The notes beneath the pieces are model-generated. The model searched no databases and was not told the origin of the DNA. It saw only the letters and a list, made by a program, of their open reading frames with translations. 64,000 nucleotides of DNA from Hypanus sabinus. Lineage: Eukaryota. The position numbers were made by a program, and so were the translations under genes. Positions 9,053 through 55,335 of the stretch are shown here, piece by piece; positions within the stretch are counted from its first letter, which is position 1, and every line of letters begins with the position of its first letter. The DNA lies in the NCBI RefSeq assembly GCF_030144855.1, contig NC_082715.1, positions 31,620,001 through 31,684,000 on the forward strand. The letters are read 5' to 3'.

Positions 9053-9198
9053 GGCCGGTGCCCCGCGCTCGGCTCAGTGCCGGCCTCCCAGCCGCTTCGA
9101 TAGAAACGCCGTGGCCTGCCTCGCCATCTAGTTCTGTTTAAGGGTAAACTAGATTCTTTCTCCTCGCGTCACCTATAAACAATGTGCTAAATGGCTTC

Positions 9199-9212
9199 GT
9201 CTCTATGGCGAC
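9199..9212. promoter_or_regulatory. RFX X-box-like motif GTCTCTATGGCGAC
   Basis: Imperfect palindrome resembling GTTGCCATGGCAAC, about 150 bp upstream of the FAM228 ATG. Confidence 0.55.
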
Positions 9213-14600: not shown

Positions 14601-14698
14601 ACACATACAAATACTGGAGGAACTCAGAAGGCCAGGCAGCATCTATGGAAAAAAGTGCAGTTGACGTTTCGGGCCGAAACCCTTCAGCAGGCTTAAGT
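14601..14698 (-). mobile_element. Penelope pLTR fragment with minimal hammerhead-like motif
   Basis: Minus strand reads CTGCTGA AGGGTTTCGGCCC GAAAC GTC; flanking tttgagca duplication at 14593-14600 and 14699-14706. Confidence 0.8.
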
Positions 14699-16712
14699 TT
14701 TGAGCAGCGGACTAAGCTCAGGCAATATTGGATGTGTGGGCTCAAAATGTAAGTATGGTGGAAGGAGTATTGCCAATATTTTTTGGCTGAAAACATATCG
14801 GCAAAGTGACTGATTAGTACAGCAAATAGTACCAAACACATGTTAGGAAAAGTTTTCTTAAATCACAATTTAATTCAGTGTTACAAAGGGATATACATAA
14901 TTTGTAGCTTGGTCAAAGAGGTAGGTTTTGTTTTGAAAAAGAAAGAAGAGGCAGAGAGAAAAATCTAGGGCTGAGAGACAAGGCAGCTGTGGGTAGAGGC
15001 ACCCAGATGTTTGAAAATCTTTTAGGGATGGAAGTGATTGTAGAGGTAAGATTTTGCTGAAGGTGGAGCAGTTACTGCTTAAAATACTAGATGTCTGTAG
15101 CAGTCAAAAATAAAGTTACCCAACTGCAAAGTATATAATACATCTACTTCCATTCCTGGGATACCTTTTTGGTTCTTCATATATTTATTTTGTTAGTTAC
15201 CCTGTTCTTATACTTTTGCCTTTTCCTTGGCAGTAACTTTTCGTATCTTCTCTACTTTTTTTAAAACTCTTGTGCTTTTATGCACTTCAGAAGATTCTGC
15301 TTTAGCTCTTGATCTCACAGATAACTTCCCTTTTGTTTTGTCTGGATTTTTTATGCATCATTGGGTGATCTAGGTTTATCAGTTCTGCCCTATTTCTAAG
15401 GTCATGCTTCCTGTTACTCTGAGAATGATTAAATTTTGTGTAGCTGTTTTCAAACACTTTCACAATTTAATTTCTCTGTCTAGTATAGTTATCCAAATTT
15501 AATGTATTTTCTCCTTTTTTCTTTTTAATAACTTTGATAAATTTAACTGAATTGTAATCTTTTACATGAAAGTGTTCTCCCTCTGATGCTCCTTCTACCT
15601 GCCCAATAGCATTCACTAAAACTAAATCTTTAATAGCTCCTCCCTTCTGTCATATGAGCATCACTCATCTACAACCTATGCCCCTTTTTGTTAGACTTGT
15701 TACATACTGCGTAAAGAAATTCTGCTGAATACAGTTTAGAAATTCTCTTGTCTTCTTTTTTACACTGACTAAATCTCATTTAAAATAAGGGAAATCAAAA
15801 TCTCTCTATTCCTGCCACAGAGGTAGAGCAGATAAATTTACTCCTTTTGGACCCTTGAACTGTTTGGAATTCAGTATATTAGTGTGATTACCCCTAGGTT
15901 TATGTAGTTTTTAAAAATATAATCCACATAGGTTTAAGTGATAATCTTCCCAACATATCAATCATTCTTAGTTACGATTCTCTCTTTAACAATATGATCA
16001 ATGGCCTCTTTTTATTACCCTCTTCTCTATCTCGTCTGTAATCCTTGTAAGCAGGTTACTTGTCCACTTTAAGTTGTGTTTTGATCAGTAATAACTAACA
16101 TACTTCCACTTGTTCTTGTCCCTCTTGCTGACCTGCTGCAATGCAGTTTTTAAATCATACATATTGCAACCACAGAAAACATCCACACAGATGAAAATCA
16201 AATGCATGGCAGAGTTGATTATGTTGAATTTCTTAAGCTTTGTTCCACACTATAAAGCAATTTGAGAGTTCAGTCATATTCCTGATCCCAGTAAAGGCAC
16301 GGGCCAACATTTGGGGTGAGGAGATTAGATATCTTTTACGAAGTGCTCCATCCTGCTCTCAATATTTTGGCATTGATAGAGCCACCCCATTTCAGCTTCT
16401 GACCTGTAGTGACTTTTTAAATGTTGGTAGTGGAGGACTTACACATTTTGGATTGATTTGATATTACCACTTGTGTAGCATTAATGGTTTTATGTTGAAT
16501 GCAGGGTTTATCTTTATTGGGATGATTTTAACTTGATGTTTATGCAATTGGTTGGTTGGTTATTTTAGTTCTAATCTTTCAATGCCAGAGCCAGTGATAA
16601 CAAGAATACAAATTTAGCATGAAGATAATTTCGATTGAAGTAACCTTTGTCTTGGATTTTGAAATTATGATTATGATATAATATTACTTTGTTTCCTCAG
16701 GATAAATTAAAA

Positions 16713-16829
16713 ATGGGCGAGTACCATGATTTGTTAACTCAATCCCTTTTAGCAACAAATCATGTTCAGGACTGTGCAATCATAGAACTGAAAAATCTCT
16801 CTGTGATGACAGCCTCTATAGGATTCAAA
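16713..16829 (+). CDS. PFN4: PFN4 coding exon 1 (exon starts at 16701)
   Basis: Acceptor ttcctcag|16701, donor AAA|gtaagc. Confidence 0.9.
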
Positions 16830-19069
16830 GTAAGCATTTCGAATTCTTTACAATATTAGATGATGATTTCGATACTGTGGATAATACATCAGTAAGTATG
16901 TTATAAGGTGCAAGAAAATAAATCTGTCAATTTTACCAGAGACAGGTGAGAGTGAATTTTTTCCAATTCCCATGAGAAGAGAAAGTACTGGTATGGAGGC
17001 ACTTGGAAAATTTCTTTATTTCTTCCAGTGGGAATAGGACACTGAGTTTTACTGATAGGTTACAGTCTATGAATTGAAATGTTAAGGATTTTTTTTTCCA
17101 AAGACACTTTTGAGTATTTTTAAGTCAGTAACTACAGCACCTTTTGTAGATTGTACATACCGCAGCCATGTTATTCTCATATTTAAAGTCTTTGATGAGT
17201 TACCAACTCATTAGGCTCTTTTGTCCTGAATGGCTTTAAGCTCCAAGCATTGTTAAAAATGCACTCATCTAGATAATTGGAGGGTATTCCATTACACTCA
17301 ATAAATTCATGACTCATCCCTTGGTGAAAAGGATTTGAGAAATCATTCATTGTAGGATATCCAGCACATGATGTTATTATAATCACACTACTTATTTGAC
17401 TGACTGAGTCACTGATCAACTGTAACTCCTAGGATATTGATTATGGAGAAACCTGATGCCCAGTGACTTCAGTTTTATCTTTGATGCCACATTTGGGTAA
17501 ATGTTTGGGTAAATGTTGTCTTGATGTTAAAGGCAATCACTCTTACCTCATCTCTGAAATTCAGTGGCTTTGTCCATGTTTCCACTGAGGGTGTAAAGAG
17601 GTGTTGAGTTAGTGAAACTCAAACTGAGCACCTGAACAGATGAAAGATAATTCAAGCTGCTGTGGATATATTGATTAGTAAAGAGTTGAAAGCCAATTTT
17701 GCAATATAAATCTTGAAATATTAATCTAGAGAAAGCATATGTAGAACAAGAAAGAATTATTTTGGACAAATGTCCTTTGATCAATCAAATGGTTTCAAGG
17801 TCTGACTGATATACTCAGTTACTTGTTGTGTTATAGTGAAGTTAGCCTCACCTGTAACAAACCACAGAATGTCTGACAAATAAAATAAAGATTTTCAATA
17901 ACATGAAGGACTTTGTTTTTTGTCAGTTGGATACAGAGGAAATTCGAGCCTTCTGGAATGCTTTCAAGCAACCAGACATCATTCAAGAATATGGCCTCTT
18001 CTTCAGAAATGTAAATTACATATGTGTCAGAGCAGATAAGGATTCAATATACAGCAAACATGTAAGATGAGAATTTTCTCAATCTAAAATTAATCCATTT
18101 CTGTTCACTTTATTTATGTGTTGTAAACTATGCACCAAAGCCTCTTCGATGGATATAAATTGTTAGTTCATGAAACAGTTTGAACTGTTAGTATAGATCT
18201 GAATAAGAAATATTTGAGGCATAGATAATTTGTTAAAGTTTTATAAGCTGGTTTATTGGTCTAAAGTATAATTTTCTTTTAATTTATTTTTACTTGCATT
18301 TTATAAAGGGAGTGTCAAACCTGATTTTCATACATTTTGAGTCTTATATTCAAACCATCTATCAGCATTTTTTTTTGTTGGGTTAATTTAAAAGTAATGC
18401 ATTGCAATGAACCAAACAGTTTAATAAGTTGTACTATTTGTTTTGAACAGAATGATAGGGGTCTTATATTTGTAAAGACTGGAATGTATATAATCTGTGC
18501 CACCTACGCAAAGGGGATGTACCCAAGTGTATGTGTTGAAGCTGTGGAAAAATTAGGTGAGTATTGGGCAAATTTTATTCTTCTATTTGTAGAAGACATG
18601 CAGTATGTTTACAGTACATACATTTTTAGAAGCTATTTTTAATATCCTGACAAGAAACTTACTAAGCAAGATCAGTGATGTGGAATGAGAAGAAATGTAG
18701 CAACTCATATATAAATGGGATTAAATAACAAAGAGCCAAGATTTAGGGTTAATATCAGTCATGCTCATAATGGTGAAGAAGTCGGGCAGTTTTTACAAAA
18801 TCAGGTATTGCTATTTCAGTAAAGACAGAATAAGCATATTTTTCTTTTAATTCATTTCACTATTATTACAAAAAGGAATATTAAATCTAAGTGTTATGCA
18901 ATTTTTGAAGATTTCATCTTTCTCTAGTCTGATGGATGGGCAAATTTTTTTATGATTCATACAAAAAATGGGCTTCACAAGCTCAAGTAATGTCTGCCTC
19001 TTGTGAAAACATCTAATAGAAATTTGTTTCTTTATTTAAGGTGACTACTTCAAAACAAAGGGCAAATAG
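16713..19069 (+). CDS. PFN4: Profilin-4, 128 aa; exons 16713-16829, 17927-18061, 18451-18556, 19041-19069
   Basis: Spliced product MGEYHDLLTQSLLATNHVQDCAIIELKNLSVMTASIGFK/LDTEEIRAFWNAFKQPDIIQEYGLFFRNVNYICVRADKDSIYSKH/NDRGLIFVKTGMYIICATYAKGMYPSVCVEAVEKLG/DYFKTKGK* matches recalled PFN4 motifs (CVRAD, ATY-x2-GMYPS-x-CVEA-x-E-x-LGDY). All introns GT-AG with phases 0, 0, 1. Confidence 0.93.
17927..18061 (+). CDS. PFN4: PFN4 coding exon 2
   Basis: ttttttgtcag|TTG ... CAT|gtaaga, 135 nt. Confidence 0.92.
18451..18556 (+). CDS. PFN4: PFN4 coding exon 3
   Basis: ttttgaacag|AAT ... TTAG|gtgagt, 106 nt. Confidence 0.93.
19041..19069 (+). CDS. PFN4: PFN4 coding exon 4
   Basis: tttatttaag|GT GAC TAC ... 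AAA TAG; candidate AATAAA at 19303-19308. Confidence 0.9.
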
Positions 19070-19459
19070 TTGGATCAAAGACTGGATGTATGGTGATTCA
19101 CGTGTATCCAAAAACACACTGAATAAGGGAAAGCAACTTGGTAAATTATGCTTGATTTTCTAAGGCCCAGGCACATCATAGGCTTTCCTCCATCTACCAC
19201 TCTATCAGAAACAAAGTCAATGAATGTTTCATCTAAGATATGGAAGATATTGCTAAAATCTGTAACACTTTACATAGTATTAGGAAACCTTTTACTTCTA
19301 GAAATAAATTCAAAACCTTGTAAACCTTATAGTTTACAAGTCCTACTCCTTCACACTACTGTAACCTTCCTTTTTGTATCCGTGTTCCTATATAAATTAT
19401 GACTTACAGTGTTTGTCATTGCTCAGAATAACATAGAATATATAACTCTAAAAGCAAAT

Positions 19460-22180
19460 CTGTGCTGGATCCTCGTCTTCCTGACCAACAGTCCACAATC
19501 AGTAAGGATGGGCACCTCCACCATGATTATTCTCAACACAGGTGTCCTACAAAGTTGTATTCTCAGTCTCTTACTTTCCTCACTATAGTCTTAAAATTGT
19601 GTGGCCAGATCCTGCTCCAATTCCATCTACAAATTTGCAGATGTTACCATTGTAGTGGCCTCTTAACTCAAATGACAATGAATCGGAGTACTGGAATGAG
19701 AAAGAGAGCCTAGTGACATGGTGTCATAACCAACAACCTTTCCATCAATGTCAGCAAAACAAACAAGCTGATCATTGACTTCAGGAAGGAGGTCAGTACA
19801 GATGTTACTTCTGGTATCGGTGGTGTTGAATTTGAGACTCTATATAACCATATAACAATTACAGCATGGAAACAGGCCATCTTGGCCCTTCTAGTCTGTG
19901 CCAAATGCTTACTCTCACCTAGTCCCACCGACCTGCACTCAGCCCATAACCCTCCATTCCTTTCCTGTCCATATACCTATCCAATTTTTTAAAAAATGAC
20001 AATACCAGACCTGCCTCTACCACTACTACTGGAAGCTCGTTCCACACAGCTACCACTCTCTGAGTAAAGAATTTCACCCTCGTGTTACCCCTAAACTTCT
20101 GCCCCTTAACTCTCAACTCATGTCCTCGTTTGAATCTCCCCCACTCTCAATGGAAAAAGCCTATCCACGTCAACTCTATCTACCCCCCTCATAATTTTAA
20201 ATGCCTCTATCAAGTCCCCCCTCAACCTTCTATGTTCCAAAGAATAAAGGCCTAACTTGTTCAACCTTTCTCTGTAACTTAGGTGCTGAAACCCAGGTAA
20301 CATTCTAGTAAATCGTCTCTGTACTCTCACTATTTTGTTGACATTTTTCCTATAATTCGGTGACCAGAACTGTACACAATACTCAAAATTCGGCCTCACC
20401 AATGCCTTGTACAATTTTTACATTACATCCCAACTATACTCAATGCCCTGATTTATAAAGGCCAGCATACCAAAAGCTTTCTTCACCTGTCCACATGAGA
20501 TTCCACCTTCAAGGAACTATGCACCGTTATTCCTAGATCACTCTGTTCTACTGCATTCCTCAATGCCCTACCATTTACCATGTATGTCCTATTTTGATTA
20601 TTCCTACCAAAATGTAGCACCTCACACTTACCAGCATTAAACTCCATCTGCCATCTTTCAGCCCACTCTTCTAGCTGGCCTAAATCTCTCTGCAAGCTTT
20701 GAAAACCTACTTCATTACCCACACCACCACCTATCTTAGTATCATCTGCATACTTACTAATCCAATTTACCACCCTATCATCCAGATCATTAATGTATAT
20801 GACAAACAACACTGGACCCAATACAGATCCCTGAGGCACACCACTAGTCACCGGCCTCCAACTTGACAAACAGTTATCCACCACTACTCTCTGGCATGTC
20901 CCATCCAGTCACTGTTGAATCCATTTTACTACTTCAATATTAATACCTAACGATTGAACCTTCCTAACTAACCTTCCCTATGGAACCCTGTCAAAGGCCT
21001 TGCTGCAGTCCATATAGACAACATCCACGGCTTTACCCTCAACAACTTTCCTAGTAACCTCTTCAAAAAATTCAGTAAGATTTGTCAAACATGACCTTCC
21101 ACGCACAAATCCATGTTGACTGCTCCGAATCAGACCCTGTCTATTCAGATAGTTATATATACCATCTCTAAGAATACTTTCCATTAATTTACCCACCACT
21201 GACATCAAACTGACAAGCCTATAATTGCTAGGTTTACTCTTAGAACCCTTTTTAAACTATGGAACCACGAGCAATACGTCAATCCTCCAGCACCATCCCC
21301 TTTTCTAATGACATTTGAAATATTTCTGTCAGAGCCCCTGTTATTTCTACACTAACTTCCCTCAAGGTCCTAAGGAATACCCTGTCAAGACCCAGAGACT
21401 TATCCACTTTTATATTCTTTAAAAGCTCCAGTACTTCCTCCTCTTTAATCATCATAGTTTCCATAACTACCCTACTTGTTTCCTTTACCTTACACAATTC
21501 AATATCCTTCTCCAGTTGAAAGCTTCAAGTTTCTAAGTCTGATTATCTCCAGTAGCCTATCCCAGTCTAACCAGGTAGACACCACTGCCAATAAAGCTCA
21601 TATGTGCTTCTGCCTCTTTAAGAGGCTAAAGGAATTTGGCATGTCCTGTTTGACGCTAACCAATTTTTTTTAATCAAGGTGCCATAGAAATCCTATCTCA
21701 ATGCATCACAACTTGGTATGACAATTGCAACTGCAAGAAACTGTTGAGTTGTGGATATAGCTTAGCACATTACAGATATCAGACCCATGCAGATAAAGTT
21801 ACCAACATAATCAAAGACCCCACCCATCCTGGACATTCTGTCTTCTCCCCCCTCATATCAGGCAGAAGATACAAAAGACTGAAAGCATGTACCACCAGCA
21901 GATTTTATTCTTTTCCACTGGACAGATTTCATTCCACTGTTATAAGACTATTGAATGATTTCCTAAAATGATAAGATGGACTCTTGATCTCGCAATCTAC
22001 CTCTTGATGGCTTTCCTCCTTTTTTTCCTGCCTGCTCTGTAACAGAAACACTTCATTCTGCACTCTATTGTTGTTTTTCCCATGAAGTACCTAAATGAAC
22101 TTGTAATGAAATGTACAGACTGTATGTAAGACTAGTTTTTCACTGTCTAGTTGCATGTGACAATAAGCAAATTTACCAAT
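19460..22180 (+). mobile_element. Rex1/Babar-type LINE remnant split by a nested CR1 (host parts about 19460-19840 and 21510-22180)
   Basis: NNLSINVSKTNKLIIDFRK before the insertion; VESFKFL and IKDPTHPGH after it. Confidence 0.75.
19843..21510 (-). mobile_element. CR1 LINE, 5'-truncated, nested
   Basis: ORFs 20483..20884 (GVPQGSVLGP, YADDTK), 20118..20414 and 20978..21208; tandem-repeat 3' tail at 19843-19860. Confidence 0.92.
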
Positions 22181-25700: not shown

Positions 25701-28470
25701 ACCTGTGACAGCCCTCCATAACACCCACAACCTTTGTGTCATCAGCAAATTTACTAACCCATCCCTCCACTTCCACATCCAGGTCATCTGTAAAAATCAC
25801 AAAGTGTAGGGGTCCTAGAACAGATCCCTGAGGCACACCACTAGTCACCGATCTCCATGCAGAATATGGCCCATCTACAACCACTCTTTGCCTTCTGTAG
25901 GCAAGCCAGTTCTGGATCCATAAAGCAATGTCCCCTTGGATCCCATGCCTCCTTACTTTCTCAATAAGCTTTGCATGGGGTACCTTATCAACTGCCTTAC
26001 TGAAATCCATATACACCACATCTACGGCTCTACCTTCATCAAAGTGTTTAGTCACATCCTCAAAAAATTCAATGCTCATAAGGCGCAACCTGCCTTTGAC
26101 AAAGCCAAGCTGACTGTTCCTAATTATATTATGCCTCTCCAAATGTTCATAAATCCCGCTCCTCAGGATCTTCTCCATCAGATTACTAACCACTTTAGTA
26201 AGATTCACTGGTTTTAATTTGCTGGACTATCTCTACACCCTTTCTTGAATAAGGGAACAACATCTGCAACTCTCCAATCCTCTAGAACCTCTCCCGTCCA
26301 CATTGATGACACAAAGATCATTGCCAGAGGCTCAGCAACCTGCTCCCTCGCCCCCCACAGTAGCCTGAGGTACATCCTGTTTGGACCCAGTGACTTATCC
26401 AACTTGATGCTTTCCAAAAGCTCCAGCACATCCTCTTCCTTAATATCTAAATCCTCAAGCTTTTCAGTCCACTGTAAGTCATCACTACAATTGCCAAGGT
26501 CCATTTCCATGCGAATACCGAAGCAAAGTACTCACTATGTAACTCTGCTATCTCCTCTGGCTCCATACACACTTTTCCACTGTCACACTTGATTGGTCCT
26601 ATTTTCTCACATCTTATCCTCTTGCTCTTCACGTAGTTGCAGAATGCCTTGGGGTTTTCCTTAATCCTGTTCGCCAAGGCCTTCTCATGGCTCCTTCTGG
26701 CTCAGCTAATTTCATGCTTAAACTCCTTCCTGCTGGCCTTATGATCCTCTAGATCTCTATTATTACCTAGTTTTTTGAACCTTTTGTAAGCTTTTCTTCT
26801 TGACTAGATTTACAACAGCCTTTGTACACCACAGTTCCTGTACCCTACCATCCTTTTCCTGTCTCATTGAAACGTACCTACGCAGAACTCCATGCAAATA
26901 TCCCCTGAATATTTGCCACATTTCTTCTGTACGTTTCCCTGAGAATTTTTTTCCAATTTATGCTTCCAAGTTCCTGCCTGATAGCCTCATATTTCCCCTT
27001 ACTCCAAATAAACACCTTCCTAACTTGACTGTTCCTATCCCTCTCCAGTGCTATGGTAAAGGAGATAGAATTGTGATCACTATCTCCAAAATGTTCTCCC
27101 ACTGGGAGATCTGACACCTGACCAGGTTCATTTCCCAATACCAGATCAAGTACAGCCTCTCCTCTTGTAGGCTTATCTACATATTGTGTCAAGAACCTTC
27201 CTGGACACACTTAACGAACTCCACCCCATCTAAACCCCTCACTCTAGGGAGATGCCAATTGATATTTGGGAAATTAAAATCTCCCACCACAACAACCCTG
27301 TTATTGTTACACCTTTCCAGAATCTGTCTCCCTATCTGCTCCTCGATGTCCGTTACTATTGTTTATAAAAAAAACCTAGTAGTTATTAACCCCTTCCTGT
27401 TCCTAACTTCCACCGATAGAGACTCTGTACTCAATCCTTCCATAACTTCCTCCTTTTCTGCAGCCGTGACATTATCTCTGATCAACAGCTCCACACTCCT
27501 ATCTTTTAGCCTCCCTCCCTGTCCTTTCTGAAACACCTGAAGCCTGGCACTCGAAGTAACCATTCCTGCCCGAGCCATCCAAGTCTCTGTAATGGGAAAA
27601 ACATCATAGCTCCAAGTACTGATCCACGCTATAAGCTCATCTGCTTTGCTCATAATACTCTGCATTAAAATAGACACATCTCAAACCATCGATCTGAGCG
27701 CATCCCTTCTCTATCACCTGCATAACCTCCCCCTTGCACTATCTCCAAGCTTTCTCAATTTTGGTTCACAATGTCCAATCCAGAATAGCTGATCCCCTCG
27801 TGGGTCAACCACCAGTTGTTCTAAAAAGCCATCATGTAGGTACTCAAGAAATTGCTCTCTGGAATCCTGAACCAAGCTGATTTTCCCAATATTGAAGTCC
27901 CCCATGACTATTGTATGACCTTTTGGCATGCAGTTTCTACCTTCCGTTGTCATTTGTCAACTTCATCCTTAATACTGTTTGGGGGCCTGTATACATCTCA
28001 CATCAGGGTCATTTTACCCTTACAGATCCTTAGCTCTATCCACAATGATTTAACGCCTTCTGACCCTATGTCACCTCTTTCTAATGATTTGATTTCATTT
28101 TTTTTTTTACCAACAGAGCAAACCTCCCCTCTTTGTTTTCCTGGCTATCCTTTTGATACAATATTTATCTTTGGACATTGAGCTCCCAGCTATAATCTTT
28201 CAGCCACGTCCAGCTTTCCCTTCCCATAAAACAGCCGCAAAGCTCTGCTTTTTAAATGTTGAACATGGACCTGACCAAAAGGTTGCTCTTTCTACACACT
28301 CCCTCTTGCTGAATGGTCGCTCAACTCAGAGAAACTGCTGCAGAGCTCTGCTTCATACATCTTTAAACCCAGACTTGACTTACAAGCAGCTCTCGTTCAC
28401 ACTGCCCCTTGCAAATTGGTTGCTCCTTAACTCAGAGAAACTGCCGCGAAGCTCTGCCTTTAAAATCTCG
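22800..28470 (-). mobile_element. Older CR1 LINE (parts about 22800-24840 and 27750-28470) hosting a younger CR1
   Basis: FADNMKIGG, FQKAFDKVP and IVMGDFN motifs; tandem 5' UTR-like units (aactcagagaaactgc at about 28323 and 28429); homologous to the 55.4-61.9 kb element. Confidence 0.85.
24851..27740 (-). mobile_element. Younger CR1 LINE (APE and RT), nested
   Basis: ORFs 25444..26208 (RT), 26878..27210 (LDLVL, GDSDH endonuclease) and 27363..27677 (ITETW); (catagaaa) tail at 24851-24868. Confidence 0.92.
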
Positions 28471-28471
28471 A

Positions 28472-29327
28472 TCACTGTACTGTTCGCGGGGAGAAGGGAG
28501 AAGTTAAACACGACCGGAATACAGCAAAACTCGAAGCGGGTTCCTTATGTCCAATTTAGTTTTCACAGCTCATGGCCTCTGTCCCGCTTACTCACGTTTT
28601 TTTCCGCTGAAAAAACTCAGCGGGTTTGTCTTTAAGCGCTGGGTGCTTGGACTCAGGGTACCGAAGCAGTTTTGAGACATTGCCTCATTAGACAGCCTCC
28701 GGGCCCGCCGCCAGATGCCTTGGCCAGGTGCGGCTGGGGTGAGAGGGCAAGGTCAGTCAGGGCCGGAGGTCGCAGTCCGGAGCGAGCGGCCGACAGGACG
28801 CCCGCCCGCCCGCCCGCCTTGCAGGATCTGTCGGCCGACAAAAGTTTGTTTCAGTAGATCGCAGCGCGGTAGCTGCTCTGATACTTACGAAGCGCTAAGC
28901 CCGAATTAGGTCGCCTGCGAATATTTTAGCACCGGGTTCCCCATGAACATTCGGTATGGTAAACAGGTTCAGAGGCAGCGATGGCACTTCCCGCCGGCCG
29001 CCCGAGGCCAAACAGTGATCCCTGGCGCGAGGGTTTCACTGCGGTTAGGCGACTCGCGTGGGTTCAACAGTGAGCGTGACCGGGACCGAGGAAAGGTGCA
29101 GCTGACTCATATCGTTTCCTCCTGGCCCGGTGGTTGGGGACCACTAAATTACACCGAGCAGTTGGGGGGTGGGGACAGCTATACGCGTGCACACTGGGCA
29201 GAAAGAACGGAACTAAAACCCCGCAACCCGGAAATAATCTCTCTACAGTATTTGTGTATTTATTTCTTTTTTTCGGGATAATCTGGGAAAGTCTCAAAGA
29301 TCGACTAGTCATTCGTTGGCGACCACT
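28472..29327. mobile_element. GC/CpG-rich non-autonomous hAT-like element(s) carrying a 28S-derived segment
   Basis: hAT/Charlie-type termini ggttggggaccacta (about 29132-29146) and gttggcgaccacta (about 29315-29328); left end not identified. Confidence 0.5.
28837..29052 (-). pseudogene. Diverged fragment of the 28S rRNA 3' end
   Basis: gacaaaag...tttcagtagatcgcagcgcggtagctgctctgatacttacgaa...aggtcgcctgcgaatattttagcaccgggttccccatgaac...cccgaggccaa aligns by eye to the reverse complement of the vertebrate 28S 3' terminus (tttcaatagatcgcagcgagggagctgctctgctacgtacgaa...aggtcgtctacgaatggtttagcgccaggttccccacgaac...tccgaggccaa), with substitutions and deletions. Confidence 0.85.
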
Positions 29328-29569
29328 AAGTTAACGTTTATGTATAGGCTAAGAAGTGACACAGTATTTTGGTTAAGCAATGAAAATCTCCAACAAGAGA
29401 ATTTAACTAGCTGCTCTTGACATTCAATGACAATACCTCATTGAGTTCCCCCATCATCAACATCCTGGTGAGCAATAGTAATCAGATATTGAGAATCTTG
29501 CCACAACCATCACTTTCTACCACTTAAAAGACTGAATCTGGAGTGTGACAATCAGAATTCCTTCTAGCC

Positions 29570-29649
29570 CGGGTGTTCCCAACCAGGGGTCCATGGACCC
29601 CTTGCTTAATGATATTGGTCTATTGCATAAACAAAGTTGGGTACCCCTG
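29570..29649. mobile_element. 80-bp hAT/Charlie-type MITE
   Basis: Ends cgggtgttcccaac / gttgggtacccctg; flanking 8-mers ttctagcc / ctctagac fit the NTCTAGAN target. Confidence 0.7.
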
Positions 29650-30244
29650 CTCTAGACTAGATGACTCATCTCCAATGGTATTCACTAAACTTCATGATAC
29701 CCAAAAGAAAGCACCTCATTTAATTGGCACCCCTTCCAGGACCCTAAACGTGTCATTTTTTCTGTCACCTACACAAAGTGGCTGCAGCGTGTAACATTTA
29801 GATATAATCAATTGATCAACTATATACTCTAGCAATAGTACCCAAACTAGTTCCAAAATCTAAAGACAAAGGCAGCAGAAACAAAGACACCATCACCTAT
29901 GCATTTCCCTCATAATTTCATAAGTATTACTGTACCTTCAATAATTACTGATCTAAATCCTAGAATTCCTCCTTCCTAGGATTGGGAGAGACCCTTAAAC
30001 AGAAGGATTGTAGTGATTCAAGATGGGGGCTAATTATCACTTTCTAAAGGCAATTTATAGGCCAGCTAGGCCACATCCTTAAAAAATAAAATTAAAAAAG
30101 GTGTTCCTAGACTTTACTTTCTTTCTGGGAAGGATTTGGGCATGCAAGCTCCTTCTTTAGAGTAGAAGCACCATACTGAATTTGCCACCAAAGAACAAAC
30201 TGCCTGTTGCAAACTCTCTGAGTTATGGGCATTTAGAGGTACCA

Positions 30245-30456
30245 TGTGGCGACCCACTTTCTGCGCAGGCGAAACGGCTCACAAATAGCCAGCGCGCGGG
30301 GAGAGACTTTGGTAATGCCCCTCTGACGTCATTTCCGCCCGGAGAGGGTGGGCACTAGGGATTAAATGCCAGCACCGCGAAATTTGAATAAACTAGTCTC
30401 GAAATGACTTGCCGACTGTGTGTAGTCTCTAGCTCTGTATGTAGTACATCGCTACA
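30245..30456 (+). mobile_element. Solo LTR, 212 bp, 4-bp TSD
   Basis: tgtggcga...tcgctaca termini; TSD acca at 30241-30244 and 30457-30460; aataaa inside; CpGs retained. Confidence 0.85.
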
Positions 30457-31990
30457 ACCACACATTTTCATGGCACTCTCAAAACAACAGCCTTTCTAAT
30501 CAATCAATTATCTAATTTGCTATTTATATTACTTTATAAATTAGTTGGACTTCTCACAGCAGTGGCCACAATGATAAAAAAAATCACTGGCTCCAAAGTG
30601 ATCAGTAGCTGCATTTCAGAATTAATCTTCAGGCTCTATAGTATTTTAGGAAGTTCTGAGTTAGATAAATACACTTTATATGTATAAATCTTTACCTCTA
30701 GAAAGCAGAAGGGATCTTATGAAAACAGACTTTTAGCATTGACTTTTATTATTTTTGTGAAAAATATGTTTGCATTGAGATAAGCCATTTATCTGCATGT
30801 TTCCAAAATAATCAAAATGATTGCACCATTTACAATAATCCTGCAGAATATTAAGAATGTAAAAGACAGTATGAAAAGACTTACATTTAAAAACAGCACT
30901 AATATTGAAATCATTTTACTCAAAACATTTTAATAAATTGTTCTCAAAAGCTGGTATAGTACAAATACCACCTTTTGATGGAACTGAAGCAATAAACAAT
31001 CGATACATTGTAATTCAAAGTTAATGTGAGGTACAGTCAAAGTACAGGGCTAGATCATACTGCTCTCTAGCTGATAACTTACAAGAGAAATGCGAATGAA
31101 CACCATCACTTGGACTATCTTATTCCTGATTTCTATGCTTGAGTATTACGATGTCGATACCGAGTTGGAGGTCAAATGCTGTGACATACAACATCACACT
31201 TCACCACGCAGTTGTTTCTGTTATTCAAGTTTACACCAAACAGCACAGCCACCTTCATCTTGTTGGAGTCACCAAACTAGATGAGCGAATTATTTTACTC
31301 ATCTTTGTTTCCATTAGTTTAATGATTGAGTACTGAATTTAATTTGATTTTTTAAAAAAATTTCAGAACTATTTCAATTATTCTTAAATGTATCACATCC
31401 TCAGGCAGGGTTCACTAACTGAGGTCCAGGGATTGTTCTGTATTACAGATGCTCCCTAGGAAGCCGTTGATTCAAGGGGTCTCAAAAAGTCTACCTGGAG
31501 GAATAATGCAGGTTGAAGTACTAACAAAAGAAATGGGTACGTTTGAGTGCAATTTGTCCAAGTCTATTTCATGACAAATATAAAAAAGGGAAGACCAGAG
31601 GATTATATCACACTTGAACTCAGCTTTCAATTACAGAAGCTGTTTCATTTGGAACTTCTATTTTAACCAGCAGATAATTATTGAGGACAGTTACCTGTAT
31701 TCCTTTTTGCACAGAATCAAAAGGTTGCTAATTTACATAGCACATTTTCCCCAATTTACTTTTCAAATATGAGACAGCAGTAGTTTTGAATATTAAAGAA
31801 GCTTTTACCCCAATTAGAACTTACACCAAAAGGTTTTTTTTGTTCCAAGGTTTGCCCACATAAATAAATGTCAATGTGCTAGAATATACAACACATCTAA
31901 AACTGCTTTGGCAGATGCTGTATTGGAATTGGTGATATGCTGTATATCTCCAATGCATAGCCAGCATGATCACATATGTACATAACCACA

Positions 31991-32758
31991 CTATTTCAAA
32001 TCTTTGTCTAATGTCATAATAAAATTGTTTATTTTCTCTTTCATTTTCTCGTCAATGAACTTCTTGAATTGTTCCCATTCCTGTAACCGGTCATGCTTCT
32101 GTTTCTCCACTTCTTTTTGATAAATACTATCGATGCTGGCCATACGACGCAGTTCTTTGTGTGTCAAACACTGGATATCACCATCATCTGCATTTCTTCC
32201 CAAGGACATGGTTGACTTAGACCTTCTGAAACAAGATGACCCTGAAGCAATTTCATTAACAGAGGAGGGCATGTGAGATCTTTTCTTCATATATTGTTTC
32301 CCCACAAGCCTTGCATCAAATTCATCTCGAACATAAGAGTTCGGACTGGTTCTGCCATTTAATCCAGCCCAAGTACCCAACAAATTTACATGTTGCTGTC
32401 CAGATTGTAAATTATTTTGTGTTGACGCAGCCATTTTACTCCTTCCAGTAAACAAAGGATTCATTTTAACACCCTTTGAATCCCAGTCTGAATTTGTCTC
32501 TTCTTTGTCTCCCCTGCTTGCGGCTTTTAATTGCACAATTAAATCATCTAATTTAAATTTCTGGAGTATTGATTTTTGTCTCAGCATATTGTGAAGTTCC
32601 TCTGTTACAGTTGTACTTTCTTGCTGCAATGATGACAGAGCAATGCAATGGCCACGGTACAGATGGTCCAGTCTATTGTGCAGGAACATATCTTCCTTTT
32701 TGTTTCTCAAGTGAGCATCCACTGTTGGCAATGGGGAGCTCTTTGCTGACTTGCTCAT
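31991..32758 (-). CDS. Uncharacterised coiled-coil protein (255 aa from ATG 32758; 276 aa if started at ATG 34481 through exon 34471-34488 spliced to 32810)
   Basis: Longest ORF in the window with no TE motifs. Helical N- and C-terminal blocks around a Ser/Gly/Asn-rich linker; splice acceptor aatattttag|32810 upstream; candidate minus-strand AATAAA at 30745-30750. Confidence 0.75.
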   Translation of the reverse strand: MSKSAKSSPLPTVDAHLRNKKEDMFLHNRLDHLYRGHCIALSSLQQESTTVTEELHNMLRQKSILQKFKLDDLIVQLKAASRGDKEETNSDWDSKGVKMNPLFTGRSKMAASTQNNLQSGQQHVNLLGTWAGLNGRTSPNSYVRDEFDARLVGKQYMKKRSHMPSSVNEIASGSSCFRRSKSTMSLGRNADDGDIQCLTHKELRRMASIDSIYQKEVEKQKHDRLQEWEQFKKFIDEKMKEKINNFIMTLDKDLK

Positions 32759-33369
32759 AATTGTATTATGGGTGGACTTTATTTCCCAGCAGACCACTTG
32801 ATTTGCTGAGCTAAAATATTAGTGCTGATGATAAAAGAATATATGTTAATTATGCATGCTTTGTTTGGGTATAAAAACATTGAAAGCTTAACTCTTTTGG
32901 CTAAACTATTTTTACTTTCAACATCTTTCATAGCATTCATTAATGTGACTATTGATATTTTAGTAATAGTGACAACTGTAAATGCGCAATGCCCTTGTCT
33001 CTCAAACCTCCCAAGTTGCTTCTTGATGTTTGATTAAATGCTCCCTCAGTAGCAAAGTGACTCTCACCTCCCCCTAGCAAAAGGCTCTCTTCTCCATCTT
33101 TACACCTTGGCTCTGACAAGATCTGAAGCTTTTATATAGCACTGTCCACAACACCTTTCAATTATTTATCTATCCAATTAGATTTATTTTGAAGCTATAT
33201 CATTTATAATATCCCCTCACTCATTGTATATTATCACCTATAAACAAAACTGCATCATCTCCATTGGACAATGAGTGCATCAAAACACTAATGGACAGTA
33301 GTAAATGCAACAGGTGAGAATGAGGTCAGATAGGACTTTTACTTATCATTTGTGAGATAGTTGTAATAT

Positions 33370-33615
33370 TCTTAGCTCTGTGGGTTTAAGGCCCACTCAA
33401 AAACACAAAAATCTTGGTGCCATCTTGCCATCTTTTGGATGAGACATTAAACCAAAGTTGATTGCTCTCAGTGGTGGAAGTACAGGGTGCTATGGATAGT
33501 TTCTAGGAAGGACAGTCAGGTCCTGTTCAATCATATTCCTTGCTCAGCAGTTAAAAAATAGATTATTATACTACAGATCGTTGTGAGCATATTGACTTCT
33601 GAGCTTCCTAAAAAA
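33370..33615 (+). mobile_element. Deu-domain SINE remnant (SacSINE1/AmnSINE1-like)
   Basis: gccatcttttggatgagacattaaaccaaag...tgctctc resembles the recalled Deu core GGATGAGACGTTAAACCGAGG...TGCTCTC. Confidence 0.6.
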
Positions 33616-35436
33616 GTAACTTCACTTCAGAAGGACTGCTATCACTGGTTCAAAATTCAAAGTAAATTCATTATCACAGTATGTACAGTATATTTCACAA
33701 TATACTACCTTGAGATTTATTTTCTTGCAGGCAATCACAGTAGAACACCAAAATACAATATAATCAATGAAAAAAATTCCTTACCTGCAAGTTCCCCTCT
33801 AAATCATTCTGTTTTGGAAGTGCACTGCCATTCCTTCACTGCCAAGCCCAAATCTTGGGACTCCCTAGCTAACAGCACCAAGGCCTGTCTTCATCAGAAG
33901 GACTGCAGTTATTCATAAAGGTAGCTTATTACCATCATCTCATGGTCCAGTTATGGACTGGCAATAATCACCCACTTCCCATAAATGACTAAAAAGTTAA
34001 ACTGAAAACCAAAGAAGAAGGCAAAGAAACTAATTTTCCCAGATGGGTGTTGCAATCTGTACTTTACTTTTCCAGATTTTGGTGGGAGGGGGAGAAGTGG
34101 AAGTCATTAATTAAAAGAAGCTATAGAAAGGGACAACCTTAATTAGGTCCTAAGGGATGATTACATTATTGGACATTGATATTTACTTTTATTTATCAAA
34201 TTCAATATTCATTAATCAGAATATTTGTTCTTGCTGTCCAATAAACCATAGTTCTAAACAAGGTTCTCAGAAGAATAACAATATGCAGGTATCTTACAAT
34301 ATGAAAGTTAACTTTCACAACTGAACTATGATGTACCACAGTATCAGAACAAATTTGCAACTGCTCATACTGAGAATTACTTTCTGGAATATTTTCTGAC
34401 AATATACACTTACAGATGCAGTAATTATATATTTTCAATATAACACGTTAAATTTTGCAAAAATGCTTACCTCTGACCCATAACTCTCCTGATAAAAACC
34501 ATTTAAGATAATTAATGTAACTACCTTCCATATATAATTGAATTTAAGTTTAAATAACTTGTTTCATTTCGGAACTGTGCATTCAATGCACATGACTAGG
34601 AACTTTTCTCTGCACTAGAAGCTTTAAATCCTTGCTGAGCCAATCTGGCAATTCCCATTAACCCTTGCATAATCGTGCTCCTGAGATTCAGGAACACCAG
34701 TAATTCTGAATCAGTTCATGAACAAAAGTACAATGAGAATAAATTGCCATACATTTCCAAATTGATTTGTCTTTGGAGTTTGACAAGATTCATTTTGTAA
34801 AAACAGTTAAAACTCTTTAAAATGATGTAAAATATTTATTGATCTCCAAAAGGTAAGCAATGTGTTAACGTTTTTGTTTCAGTTTGTCACTATAGTAATG
34901 CTGCATTTAGCATTGCTAAATTCTCGGATTTAATCCATGCTATGTTTACTCCCAAATTGTTGGTTTCAGGTGTCTCTTTATAATGAAAATGAACAAAGCA
35001 TATTATGCTATATCTTCTTTTATTCAGCTTCTTGTATTTCATCCTTGTTTGTCAAGAACGAAATAGCTGAAAAGGTCAAGTGTTCAGCCTCAGCTTATGT
35101 ACCACCTTGTTGTATCATCGGTGGGTCTGCATGACTAGGCTTGCATGATAATTATTTGGCTAGTTGATGGGGGGGAATACCAACCATTGTGTATTAATTA
35201 CAAATTATGATATCACTTTACAATGTACGAGTTCAAATGGTCAAATATCTTTCTCTAAATCCAGTTTCCTGCATTACTCTTACTAACGGTAGTAGCCCAT
35301 ATATTTCTGAAAAAAGAGTATTTTCAGAATATGATCATACCAGATTTATTTAACTACCGTATATTACCACTTTAAATTGTTATTTTCTGTGTATTGGCTC
35401 TTAATTTATTTAAAATGTATCCTATCATTTTCTGAT

Positions 35437-41375: not shown

Positions 41376-44300
41376 CTGAAATAGAAATTAAAATCAAATC
41401 AACTAAATAAAATCCTTTCCATGCAAACGTGTTTTAAAGTCAGAAATTTTAGGCATTACATAAAATTTTCAATATTTACCATTCTTGCCCAAGTTGGCAG
41501 AAACCCTTTATATAATGACAATAATCCTTCTCTCTTTATTGTCTGCTTCAGACAATCATACGTGGACGTATATAGTAAGCCCCTAGTAACAAAAACAAAA
41601 GGCAAATAAATAAGTACAACAAAATTCTCAGAGTTAATTAATACAATAAAATCACTTTTAAAACAAATGTGTGTACAAAGCCCATTAGGTAAATAAAGTA
41701 TAGATGAATTTAGAAAGAATGTAAACATTTTGTATTTCAGCTTAACGATTTTATTTGGCCACACAAAGCAATGGATAATTTGCCAAGCATCAAATGCACT
41801 TCTGTACCAAGATATACGATTGATAATTTTTCCAGCTTTGTGATGACAAAAATATGTAATTGAGTTATCTTTTTATTGCAAGGTATTTTCAAAGTATGTA
41901 CAGTGGATTACAGTTACTTGGGGAATTGGTTAATCAGAGCAGCCACATACCTGGGAAAACTCTCAGAGAACAAAAACAAATCAAAAACATTGCTGGGACA
42001 CCTTTCATTTATTTGGGACACCACAACACTTAATTTGGACAGGAGGCTGTTGCCGAACAGTTTCTAAATAGTCTTAGTCACATGCATTTGTGTCGCCATT
42101 AGACGCTACACCCTACTTGGAGTGAACAGATTTTAAACAGCATCAGTTGTATGTGTTTGTGTTCAACAAGCTGTGATCTTTGTCACTGATTGTTAGTAAG
42201 AAATAAGCAGAATGGCAATCCAGAACTATTTTGCTCACTGCGGTTTCAAACATTGAGGCCTGGAAATGTCAGAAAAGCCCGAGGTGAAAAAGAAACAATT
42301 TCACTATTTCAACAAGTTAGGAACTACAAAGAACTTGAAGGTACCAACAATAATCTTGAATGTTACCTTTGGTCCCCCCAAACATTTGTCTCTCCGCTGT
42401 GGCCCCCAGTATATTTGATAAGTATACATTTGAATATGACAACAGCCACACCACCCGGTACACTGCTTTGACTGGCAGACTAAACCAGGAGAGGGTAGTT
42501 GGCAGGCCTCATACCCCAGTGAGATTGGGACATGCCTGTCCTAGCATGTGAAGTCAGCTCTAGCGGATTGGGCAAATGAGATCTACAGTGTGGTCAAGAA
42601 GGTGATTCTGCAGCTCTGTGGAGAGCAAGGGGCATGACGAGGCACAGTCGTGGTCATCTACCACTATCAGGGAACAACCCAATTGTGAAATCTACTTGTA
42701 CCACTGGACATGAACTTCCGAAGTTGAGAGAGCTTAACTGCTCCAGTGCAACAACTTTGCCACTTTAAAAACTCTCCCGCACAGGTCTCCTGCCTTCATT
42801 GGATACAACGGATAATCCATCAGTAGTACTGGGAGTGTTCCGATTTGTCCTGTATTCAAATGTATAATGTGTTAATCAGTTAAATGGAACCAGATGGGGG
42901 AGGAGATACAAAGAAGAAACTCAGGTGGGATAGGTGTGTGGGTAATGGGTAGATGAACCAGGTTGGGAGTATGATGAATCTGGGAGAAGGAAGGAGACAA
43001 CTGGAAAATGAAAGGAGAATTTAAGATGGGCCACTAGGAGTGGGAAAGGAACACTGTGGGTTACATGAATTTGGAAAATTCACTGTTGATATCATTGGGC
43101 TACAGGCTTCCTAAGTGTTTGAGGTTGACCGCAACAAGGCAGTAGAGAAGTACAAGGACAAGCAGGTTGATGTGAGAATATCAAGACGTACAAACAAGCT
43201 GGATGAACTCAGCAGGCCGGGCAGCATCTGTTGAAAGAAGCAGTCAACATTTTGGGTTGAGACCCTTCGTCAGGACTAAAGAAGGAGGGGGCAGGGGCCC
43301 TATAAAGAAGGTGGGGGGAGGGTGGAAGGTGCCAGGTGGAAAACCAATCAGAGGAAAGATCAAGGGGTGGGGGAGGGGAAGCAGGGAGGGGATAGGCAAG
43401 AGAGGTGAAGAAGGAATCTGAGGGGAAAGCACTATGGGTAGTAGAAGAAAGCAGATTTGTGAGAGGTTATAGGCAGCTAGAAGAGGAGGCAGAGTGAAGG
43501 TGTGATGGGGGAAGGGAGAGGGAGGGAATTACCGGAAGTTGGAGAATTCGATGCTCATACCAAGGGGGTGGAGACTACCCAGACGGTACATGAGATGTTG
43601 TTCCTCCAACCGAAGTTTGGCCTCATCATGGCAGTAGAGGAGGCCATGTATGGACATATCCAAATGGGAATGTGAAGGAGAGTTGAAGTGAGTGGCAACC
43701 GGGAGATCCTGTCTGTTGTGGCGGACAGAGTGTAGGTGCTCGACGAAGTGGTCTCCCAATCTGCATCGGGTCTCGCCGATGAAGAGGAGGCCGCACCGGG
43801 AGTACGGGTTGCAATAGATTACCCCAACAGACTCACAAGTAAAGTGTTGCCTCACCTAGAAGGACTGTTTGGGGCCCTAAATGGTGGTAAGAGAGGAGGT
43901 GTAGGGACAAGTGTAGCACTTACACTTGCAGGGATAAGTGCCGGGTGGGAGATCTGTGGGGAGGGACGTGTGGACCAGGCAGTCGCGGAGGGAACGATCC
44001 TTGCAAAATGCAGAAAGGGGTAGAGAGGGAAAGATGTCCTTAGTGGTGGGGTCTTGTTGAAGGTGGTGGAAGTTGCAGAGGATAATATGCTGGATCCGGA
44101 GGCTGGTGGGGTGATAGGTGAGGACAAGGGGAACACAGTCCCTCTTGTGGTGACGGGAGGATGAGGTGAGGGCTGAAGTGTGGGAAATGGAGGAGATGTG
44201 AGTGAGGGCATCATTGATGACGGCAGAAGGGAAACCGTGATTCTTAAAGAAAGAGGACATTTGGGATGTCCTGGAACGGAAAGCCTCATCCTTGGAGCAG

Positions 44301-54948: not shown

Positions 54949-55335
54949 CGCACTGAGTCAGCCCGGAGAGCACACTCCGATGGATCAAACATTAAAAAAA
55001 AAGAAACGATAATCAGCGGTGCGCATGTATTTTCTGACGCAAAGGAAAAGGTTACGCGTCGTGTCCGAATAAGAATGCAGCCGGCAGACAGGCGCCGGTC
55101 AGAGTGAGCGAGATCGAGCCGTGAGGAACTAGGCCGCTGGACCGGGGGCGGTGGCGGAGCCGCCGACTGCCCGGTTCTCGATGCAGACGGGAAGGGGAAT
55201 GTCCGTTCAGAGTGCGCCTGCTCGCACCGACTCACCGGCAAAGGGCTGCGAGCATTGACCGTGCTGAACGAGGGACAACTCATTGCGTTCAAATATTTGA
55301 ACGACAAAGTGCAGATTTGATCGAGAACAGAAGAC
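54850..55335 (-). promoter_or_regulatory. CpG island / promoter of SLC25A27
   Basis: CpG-rich; GC box gggggcggtgg; NRF1-like tgcgcatg (about 55020) and tgcgcctgc (about 55213); strong minus-strand donor CCG|gtgagt at 55236 suggests a 5' UTR exon. Confidence 0.7.

What the first reader, a model, noticed from the sequence alone, without database searches (positions are those of the whole stretch)
28472..29327. 28S rRNA 3'-end segment carried inside a hAT-like DNA transposon
Seen: about 215 bp (28837-29052, minus strand) homologous to the extreme 3' end of 28S rRNA, ending at the mature terminus (cttttgtc). It is diverged and has internal deletions, yet the whole block keeps many CpGs, has no poly(A) tail, and lies next to two hAT/Charlie-type terminal motifs (about 29132-29146 and 29315-29328). 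Known: 28S-3'-derived mobile elements exist as LINE-mobilised SINE28 in mammals. Inference: this may instead be rDNA captured and amplified by a cut-and-paste MITE family; strong divergence from rRNA together with retained CpGs suggests a recently copied family rather than a single old pseudogene.
Basis: partly seen in the sequence, partly recalled or inferred. Interest (0 to 1): 0.72.

Follow-up and report, generated by a model that had tools for sequence, protein, structure and literature searches.

The report
hAT-type transposon copy carrying 28S tail
This is one roughly 850-base copy of a very abundant, immobile "cut-and-paste"-type repeat of a cartilaginous-fish genome whose middle is a decayed copy of the last part of the large ribosomal RNA gene; it is a tidy curiosity already met many times by this scan, with the one odd feature that this old copy has kept all its CpG sites.

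Summary
Minus strand 28837-28958 is homologous to the last ~136 nt of eukaryotic 28S rRNA (79.5% to a reference tail that Rfam places at LSU 3297-3399). It lacks 14 nt, runs to the mature terminus and has no A-tail. Homology up to ~29030-29052 is weak.

The block about 28483-29328 has CpG o/e 1.00, against 0.27 for the window. Two exact copies of TAGTGGTC(C/G)CCAAC lie at 29133-29146 and 29315-29328.

The block is a multi-copy family. In three relatives' DNA contig sets, summed depth is 10^3-10^4 times single-copy depth. More than 100 distinct contigs cover single sites. The family edge falls exactly at 29328, the hAT-type terminus.

The capture reading is supported. At 6 of 6 testable sites the family majority letter is the canonical 28S letter where this copy differs.

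Not supported:
- "Recent": the insertion is orthologous in relatives about 3-4% diverged, and other copies differ from it by 8-18%.
- An intact MITE: there is no left inverted repeat and no 8-bp duplication here.

CpG retention is confined to the element and is not explained by youth; the copy is probably unmethylated.

This scan has already reported the same family at ten or more other places in this genome. No paper describing it was found; Dfam and Repbase could not be checked.

The parts
28483..29328 (-). This copy of the repeat family, about 846 bp. The right edge is exact; the left edge is good to about +-10 bp.
   Evidence: summed contig depth falls from about 12,000-43,000 (29281-29341) to 19-82 (29342-29402). 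A contig from another copy (record 16) stops matching exactly at 29328. On the left, depth rises from 231 to 1,208 to 3,450 across 28366-28548, and 'goes back' joints of the flanking tandem unit end at 28469-28482.
29315..29328 (-). Outer hAT-type terminal motif TAGTGGTCGCCAAC (terminal TAGTG fits YARNG).
   Evidence: Exact pattern hit. It coincides with the family edge. hAT definition and similar inverted repeats are in PMC3014272.
29133..29146 (-). Inner second copy of the terminal motif, TAGTGGTCCCCAAC. The family majority has G at 29146, giving CAGTGGTCCCCAAC.
   Evidence: exact hit. table 3 (29146 A>G in 11,112 of 11,160 depth). Family contigs run through it (records 5, 6, 15), so it is internal to the amplified unit.
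29147..29314 (-). Right arm between the two terminal motifs. It is not rDNA-like, has 46% G+C and still has CpG o/e 1.06.
   Evidence: Depth 26,000-34,000 in X1.
29053..29132 (-). Stretch between the inner motif and the recognisable 28S part. Its origin is undecided (more 28S, or the transposon's own sequence).
   Evidence: No Rfam LSU hit. High family depth.
28959..29052 (-). Probable upstream continuation of the 28S fragment, in a variable expansion-segment region. Support is weak.
   Evidence: The alignment to L002 reaches 29030, but the upstream part alone has p about 0.04. No Rfam hit.
28837..28958 (-). 28S rRNA 3'-end fragment, corresponding to the last ~136 nt of LSU rRNA. It has a 14-nt internal deletion and ends at the mature terminus ...CTTTTGTC.
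   Evidence: Family-majority letters equal canonical 28S letters at 6/6 sites.
28693..28836 (-). 76% G+C sequence directly continuing past the 28S terminus; inferred to be 3' external transcribed spacer. It contains (CGCC)5 at 28799-28818.
   Evidence: A composition break lies at about 28693. Long loose ends at 28699 in X1 and X3 go on into different GC-rich sequence (table 7). The spacer identity is an inference; the host rDNA was not available.
28483..28692 (-). Left arm, 48% G+C, CpG o/e 0.99. At 28483-28609 it has 10-20 times lower family depth than the core.
   Evidence: table 2. A variant joining 28558 to 28610 exists in another copy (table 5)..
28478..28487 (+). Possible remnant of the left inverted repeat (TACTGTTCGC against the expected TAGTGGTCGC, 8/10). 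It overlaps the end of the flanking tandem unit, so the terminus looks truncated.
   Evidence: Seen by eye. Not found by pattern search with up to 3 mismatches in 14 or by local alignment. My estimate of chance is about 0.01 for a 30-bp search space.

Best explanation
This is a fixed, immobile copy of a non-autonomous hAT-type DNA transposon family.

Inferred history: in an ancestor of this group of cartilaginous fishes, such an element acquired about 350 bp of the host rDNA unit. The piece comprised the last ~135-215 nt of 28S and the first ~140 nt of the spacer behind it. The most likely route is template switching during repair after excision, or use of a second terminus; an extra internal copy of the terminal motif lies about 95-190 bp upstream of the 28S piece (29133-29146 against 29052 or 28958).

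The chimera was then mobilised in trans by a hAT transposase and spread to thousands of sites.

This copy inserted downstream of a mitochondrial-carrier (UCP4-like) gene before the split from at least two related organisms. It has lost its left terminus and target duplication, and has since changed at about 3% of sites.

Shown here: the 28S homology, the multi-copy family, the family edge at the hAT-type terminus, the shared insertion, and descent from a more 28S-like ancestor.

Inferred: the capture mechanism, the spacer identity, and mobilisation by a hAT transposase.
For: 28S homology through L017/L002 and Rfam.

Multi-copy family in organisms A, B and C:
- 14,350-19,678 contigs were laid on the 1.8 kb stretch.
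- Summed depth in the element core is 8,000-177,000, against 6-21 in unique flank.
- 60-110 distinct contigs cover single sites.

Family edge exactly at 29328, at TAGTGGTCGCCAAC (record 16).

The terminal motif fits YARNG and is 14/16 identical to the hAT-N3_AC inverted repeat CAGTGGTTCCCAACCT. It is also near the SPIN repeat CAGYGGTTCTCAACCT (PMC3014272). The right flank AGTTAACG has the TTAA core of the NYYTARRN target.

There is no A-tail or microsatellite tail, and the rDNA-like part continues past the mature 3' end.

At 6/6 sites the family majority equals canonical 28S where this copy differs.

Junction-bridging contigs of single-copy depth exist in organisms A and C (records 3, 7, 31).

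Earlier reports of this scan describe the same family elsewhere in the genome. These are leads, not evidence.
Against: - In this copy there is no left inverted repeat and no 8-bp duplication (GATCACTG or neighbouring 8-mers on the left, AGTTAACG on the right).
- The left 130 bp has 10-20 times less family depth than the core, so the canonical left end of the family was not seen here.
- No hAT transposase lies in the window.
- The host's own 28S and spacer were not available, so 'host rDNA' and 'spacer' are inferred.
Confidence: 0.75

Rival explanations
1. The repeat unit is real, but the hAT-like motifs belong to neighbouring or nested MITE fragments. The rDNA-bearing unit would have spread by another route: another DNA-transposon superfamily, Helitron-like capture, or duplication of a composite.
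For: - Both motifs have the same orientation and no inverted partner was found.
- There is no target duplication.
- An unrelated abundant MITE with a similar CAGGGGT(T/A)CCCAAC terminus lies 250 bp away.
- The left 130 bp has much lower depth.
Against: - The family edge coincides to the base with the outer motif (record 16).
- Contigs of many copies run from the rDNA part through the inner motif to the outer one (records 5, 6, 15).
- The ends do not fit Helitron termini (no 5' TC and no 3' hairpin plus CTRR between A and T).
- Independent earlier reports classify full copies as hAT (unverified).
Confidence: 0.12
2. It is a retroposed rRNA-derived element of the SINE28 kind, or a processed 28S pseudogene copied by LINE machinery.
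For: The same part of 28S (the 3' end) gave rise to SINE28 in mammals (PMC4994717). LINE reverse-transcriptase fragments are frequent in the window. A 2-unit GGGAGAA repeat lies at the minus-strand 3' end.
Against: - There is no A-rich tail.
- The homology runs past the mature rRNA end into spacer-like DNA.
- About 275 bp of non-rDNA sequence with hAT-type termini belongs to the amplified unit.
- Depth is lowest, not highest, at the would-be 3' end. That is the opposite of 5' truncation.
Confidence: 0.03
3. It is a dispersed fragment of the rDNA array (an orphon or a relic of a former nucleolar organiser), not a mobile element.
For: The 28S end is followed without a break by GC-rich, CpG-rich spacer-like sequence.
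Against: - There are thousands of copy-equivalents with the same non-rDNA arms in three organisms.
- Only about 350 bp is rDNA-like.
- There is no further rRNA in the window.
- The 14-nt deletion is not flagged as private to this copy among the rows shown (65 indel rows were not shown, so this is weak).
Confidence: 0.03

Closest known systems
Non-autonomous hAT families of the Charlie/SPIN type (e.g. hAT-N3_AC and SPIN_NA of Anolis, PMC3014272; MER5 of mammals, the latter from memory)
   Same: Terminal motif YARNG. The inverted-repeat sequence CAGTGGT(C/T)C(C/T)CAACC is 14/16 identical. Sizes are a few hundred bases and copy numbers are in the thousands. The target has a TA-centred core.
   Different: The interior is host rDNA (28S 3' end plus spacer). 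A second, internal copy of the terminus is present. This copy lacks the left terminus and the 8-bp duplication.
Host-fragment capture by DNA transposons (Pack-MULE type transduplication), and Pokey/mPok of Daphnia with rDNA spacer repeats inside a piggyBac element (PMC10946416 table 2, PMC3849761)
   Same: A cut-and-paste element carries a piece of host DNA, in Pokey's case rDNA spacer, and spreads it.
   Different: A different superfamily (hAT) and a different cargo (28S coding end plus 3' spacer). There is no sign that the family targets rDNA. Copy number is far higher.
SINE28 (mammals; PMC4994717)
   Same: [quoted passage not shown]
   Different: SINE28 is an RNA-mediated, Pol III-transcribed, LINE-dependent, low-copy element (27 loci in human). 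The element here has no tail, includes spacer beyond the mature end, has DNA-transposon termini and occurs in thousands of copies.
Second rDNA-carrying family reported by this scan in the same genome (pogo/Tigger-like, 28S 5' end plus ITS2; notes s1-228281, s1-191509)
   Same: The same genome and the same kind of cargo (an end of 28S with adjoining spacer) inside a non-autonomous DNA transposon.
   Different: The other end of 28S and a different superfamily. Not examined here.

Membership tests
hAT superfamily (non-autonomous member) | Terminal motif 5'-YARNG | tested here: met
   The right end reads TAGTG on the minus strand (29324-29328). The family majority of the inner copy reads CAGTG. 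Definition from PMC3014272.
hAT superfamily (non-autonomous member) | Pair of short terminal inverted repeats | tested here: not met
   There is no plus-strand partner with up to 3 of 14 mismatches anywhere near. Local alignment of the right end against 27900-28900 is not above shuffles. Only an 8/10 remnant lies at 28478-28487. This holds for this copy; the family could not be tested.
hAT superfamily (non-autonomous member) | 8-bp target site duplication | tested here: not met
   The right flank is AGTTAACG (29329-29336). The left flank at the best boundary is GATCACTG. The nearest look-alike, AGTTAAAC at 28502-28509, matches 6/8 and is not significant (my estimate p about 0.25). The left terminus appears truncated, so the test is uninformative for the family.
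hAT superfamily (non-autonomous member) | Inverted-repeat sequence like that of described hAT families | tested here: met
   CAGTGGTCCCCAACCA against hAT-N3_AC CAGTGGTTCCCAACCT is 14/16. The SPIN repeat is CAGYGGTTCTCAACCT (PMC3014272 table 1).
hAT superfamily (non-autonomous member) | Autonomous partner encoding a hAT transposase with matching termini | not tested
   None lies in the window (ORFs of 130 aa or more give only RVT_1 and Mito_carr). The genome could not be searched.
Interspersed repeat family | Many copies sharing the same edges | tested here: met
   depth is 10^3-10^4 times single-copy in three organisms, more than 100 contigs cover single sites, and the right edge is sharp at 29328. 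The left edge is less sharp.
28S (LSU) rRNA-derived sequence | Significant similarity to the 3' end of LSU rRNA | tested here: met
   Indirect but strong. The window matches L017 (E 8e-19; 97/122) and L017 matches Rfam RF02543 at 3297-3399 (E 3e-08). The direct Rfam hit is weak (9.7 bits).
28S (LSU) rRNA-derived sequence | Derived from the host's own rDNA, with spacer continuity | not testable with these tools
Host rDNA was not available. rRNA-like contigs are filtered from read laying.
SINE28 / processed rRNA retro-copy | 3' A-rich tail directly after the RNA's end | tested here: not met
   After ...CTTTTGTC comes GGCCGACAGATCC... and 76% G+C DNA.
CpG island (sequence criteria: 200 bp or more, G+C 50% or more, o/e 0.6 or more) | Length, G+C and CpG o/e | tested here: met
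   846 bp, G+C 55.6%, o/e 1.00, TpG+CpA o/e 0.90. The flanks have o/e 0.50 and 0.16. It is one of three such blocks in 64 kb.
CpG island (functional sense) | Unmethylated in the germ line | not testable with these tools
   Only indirect. Three CpG losses were seen, against about 10-26 expected under 5-15-fold CpG hypermutation.

The most novel reading that the evidence does not exclude
The family's copies, or at least this one, behave as DNA-encoded non-methylated CpG islands. An insertion older than the split from 3-4% diverged relatives has kept CpG o/e 1.0 in every sub-block, including the non-rDNA arms, and the block is sharply confined to the element. If this holds family-wide, a hAT element with rDNA cargo has seeded thousands of orphan CpG islands across these genomes, with possible effects on chromatin and transcription.
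Probability: 0.2. Interest if true: 0.55.

Novelty: new member of a known kind. Interest (0 to 1): 0.3.

Why it matters
The mechanism is ordinary (cargo capture by a non-autonomous DNA transposon), but the case has several practical consequences.
- It scatters thousands of 28S look-alikes through the genome. These can mislead rRNA annotation, rDNA FISH and copy-number estimates, and RNA-seq rRNA filtering.
- A 2024 review of rDNA inside transposons (PMC10946416, table 2) lists no DNA transposon with 28S coding sequence. A documented hAT family with 28S plus spacer cargo would add a case next to Pokey and SINE28.
- The CpG retention of an old copy offers a natural test of whether CpG-dense inserted DNA escapes methylation in a cartilaginous fish.

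Tried and rejected
1. Rfam at gathering threshold on the whole window found nothing. Permissive scans gave only a 42-nt weak LSU hit and nothing upstream.
2. No second copy lies in the window (self-BLAST).
3. Attempts to fetch other copies all failed. The 112-aa spurious ORF found no protein. Exact 19-22-mers of the family were absent from genome contigs and viral contigs. The search of earlier findings by sequence was blank.
4. Left inverted repeat and duplication: pattern search, local alignment and inspection gave only an 8/10 remnant.
5. A hairpin behind the 28S end is not better than shuffles (z = -0.99).
6. A promoter-type explanation for the CpG island (5' end of a neighbouring gene) is rejected. 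The carrier gene runs on the minus strand from about 54.2 kb to 41.5 kb with its own island at 54.7-55.5 kb. The element lies downstream of it and of the 268-aa ORF, and the flanks are CpG-poor.
7. Helitron ends were considered and do not fit.

Full report
**What is there**

The plus strand 28483-29328 is a G+C-rich (55.6%), CpG-rich block in an otherwise CpG-poor window (CpG o/e 1.00 against 0.27).

Read on the minus strand, 28958->28837 resembles the end of 28S rRNA. I could not use a remembered 28S as a reference. I therefore scanned metagenome contigs for an 18-mer of the conserved core and obtained three contigs with 28S-type tails.

L017's tail is placed by Rfam at LSU_rRNA_eukarya positions 3297-3399 of 3401 (43.7 bits, E 3.1e-08). 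L011's tail is placed at 3320-3401.

The window aligns to L017 with 97/122 identities, score 60.5 against 10.2+-1.4 for shuffles (BLAST E 8e-19). The alignment has one 14-nt gap: the window lacks GTCAGCCCTCGATC, which is the 3' strand of the last long helix. It then ends CAAACTTTTGTC, against CAAGCTTTTGTC at the reference terminus.

Rfam on the window itself gives only a weak hit at the right place and strand (28849-28890, model 3335-3376, 9.7 bits). The alignment to L002 reaches 29030, but the upstream part alone is borderline (p about 0.04), and Rfam sees nothing there.

Past the terminus there is no A-run. The sequence continues into 144 bp of 76% G+C DNA with (CGCC)5. I read this as 3' external spacer; that is an inference.

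**The hAT-type motifs**

YAGTGGTCSCCAAC matches exactly only at 29133-29146 and 29315-29328, both on the minus strand. Chance expectation for exact hits in 64 kb is about 0.002 by my arithmetic.

The terminal TAGTG fits the YARNG end of hAT elements. The motif is close to inverted repeats printed for lizard hAT families: hAT-N3_AC CAGTGGTTCCCAACCT is 14/16 identical to the inner motif with the family-majority G at 29146, and SPIN reads CAGYGGTTCTCAACCT (PMC3014272).

**Is it a family?**

There is no second copy in the window. Public runs answer the question.

Twenty runs from 11 studies and 10 organism labels hold part of the stretch. None holds more than 27% of the sampled words, so none is the source species.

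I laid three DNA contig sets (organisms A, B, C) and one RNA-like set on 28000-29800 at 80% likeness.

- Unique flank has depth 6-21.
- The core 28610-29341 has summed depth about 2,700-60,000 (X1), 15,000-177,000 (X3) and 900-36,000 (X5).
- Up to 60-110 distinct contigs cover single sites.

The tool warns that summed depth is not a copy number. As an order of magnitude it means thousands of copy-equivalents.

The right edge is sharp. Depth falls to 19-82 from 29342, and a contig from another copy (record 16) stops matching exactly at 29328. So the outer motif is the true end of the amplified unit.

Contigs of other copies run from the rDNA part through the inner motif into the right arm (records 5, 6, 15). 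The inner motif is therefore internal to the family.

The left edge is softer. Depth rises across 28427-28548, the flanking ~105-bp tandem unit ends at 28469-28482 (joints in table 5), and 28483-28609 has 10-20 times less depth than the core.

**Capture and descent**

Within 28837-29030 the family majority differs from this copy at six alignable sites. At all six the majority letter is the letter of the canonical 28S tails of L002 and L017.

The family ancestor was therefore more 28S-like than this copy. That is what one expects if an rDNA piece was captured once and then amplified and decayed.

**Age**

Contigs of single-copy depth from organisms A and C bridge both junctions of this very insertion (records 3, 7, 31). 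Their unique flanks differ from the window by about 2.7-4.5%. That fits the 21-27% share of intact 31-mers.

The insertion therefore predates the split of these taxa. The longer contigs of other copies differ from this one by about 8-18% (table 8). 'Recently copied' is not supported.

**hAT hallmarks in this copy**

No left inverted repeat was found by pattern search or local alignment. By eye, 28478-28487 (TACTGTTCGC) matches the expected TAGTGGTCGC at 8/10 but overlaps the flanking tandem unit.

The 8-mers next to the ends do not match (GATCACTG against AGTTAACG). The left terminus seems truncated and the copy is immobile.

I could not fetch any other copy. Family-level inverted repeats and duplications therefore rest on earlier notes of this scan, which I could not verify.

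**CpG**

All six sub-blocks, including the non-rDNA arms (28483-28692 o/e 0.99; 29147-29328 o/e 1.06), have o/e 0.78-1.36. TpG+CpA is not in excess (0.90). The immediate flanks are CpG-poor (0.50 and 0.16) with TpG/CpA excess.

There are 26 sites where the family majority differs from this copy.

- Three are CpG-to-TpG/CpA losses in this copy.
- Four are CpGs that only this copy has.
- The remaining 19 are non-CpG differences, or 2.65% per non-CpG site.

At that rate, 5-15-fold CpG hypermutation would predict about 10-26 losses of 64 (P of 3 or fewer = 8e-3 to 1e-8). These figures assume that the shown majority differences are complete.

Youth cannot explain this, because the insertion is shared with relatives. 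A neighbouring promoter cannot either. The carrier gene's exons (Mito_carr at 53756-54175 and 41459-41764, minus strand) and its island at 54.7-55.5 kb lie elsewhere.

The likeliest reading is that this CpG-dense insert has stayed unmethylated. This is untested.

**Comparison with what is known**

The mechanism is ordinary cargo capture by a non-autonomous DNA transposon. A 2024 review lists, as rDNA inside transposons, only Pokey (spacer repeats), 5S-derived SINEs and TRIMs, and SINE28 (PMC10946416 table 2).

SINE28 uses the same part of 28S but is RNA-mediated and low-copy (PMC4994717). Full-text searches found no report of a hAT family with 28S cargo. Dfam and Repbase could not be consulted.

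This scan has already reported the same family at ten or more other places in this genome, and a second family carrying the 28S 5' end.

**Verdict**

This is a new member of a known kind, of modest interest. CpG retention is the one feature worth a follow-up.

Noticed in passing
L017:230-520 (metagenome contig MDSP01083123.1): A 28S 3' tail (Rfam LSU 3297-3399, E 3e-08) followed by about 100 nt of GC-rich downstream sequence sits inside AT-rich non-rDNA DNA of an unknown organism. It may be a parallel case of an rDNA end out of place.
   Followed up: partly
L002:1-1760: A chimeric-looking metagenome contig. It is AT-rich and coding-like up to about 1540, then 28S-3'-like to its end. There is no Rfam hit at gathering threshold.
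   Followed up: partly
window 28217-28482: Three ~105-bp tandem-like units (motif AACTCAGAGAAACTGCYGC..AGCTCTGC), of low copy number in relatives (depth 120-460), abut the element's left edge.
   Followed up: partly
window 28000-28240: A very high-copy repeat with a T-run (summed depth up to 130,000 in X1 and 450,000 in X3). It is unrelated to the finding.
   Followed up: no
window 29562-29657: A ~95-bp palindromic MITE with inverted repeat CTAGAGCAGGGGT(T/A)CCCAAC. It is very abundant in all three DNA sets and prominent in the RNA-like contig set (depth 4,867).
   Followed up: partly
window 8100-9500 and 54700-55500: The two other CpG islands of the window. The first lies next to a LINE reverse-transcriptase ORF (6602-7261, minus strand). 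The second lies 5' of the first Mito_carr exon (53756-54175, minus strand) of the UCP4-like gene.
   Followed up: partly
window 31991-32797 (-): A 268-aa ORF without any Pfam match, downstream of the carrier gene. It is the 'orphan ORF' of note s1-200178.
   Followed up: no
window 28526-28542, 28610-28626, 29219-29233: The short motif GCGGG(G)TT occurs twice in the left arm and, inverted, in the right arm. It could be subterminal transposase-binding repeats or chance.
   Followed up: no
window 29001 and 28699 (table 7): A few long contigs match the element up to these points and then go on into different GC-rich sequence. They may be the true rDNA unit or a subfamily with longer expansion segment or spacer.
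   Followed up: no
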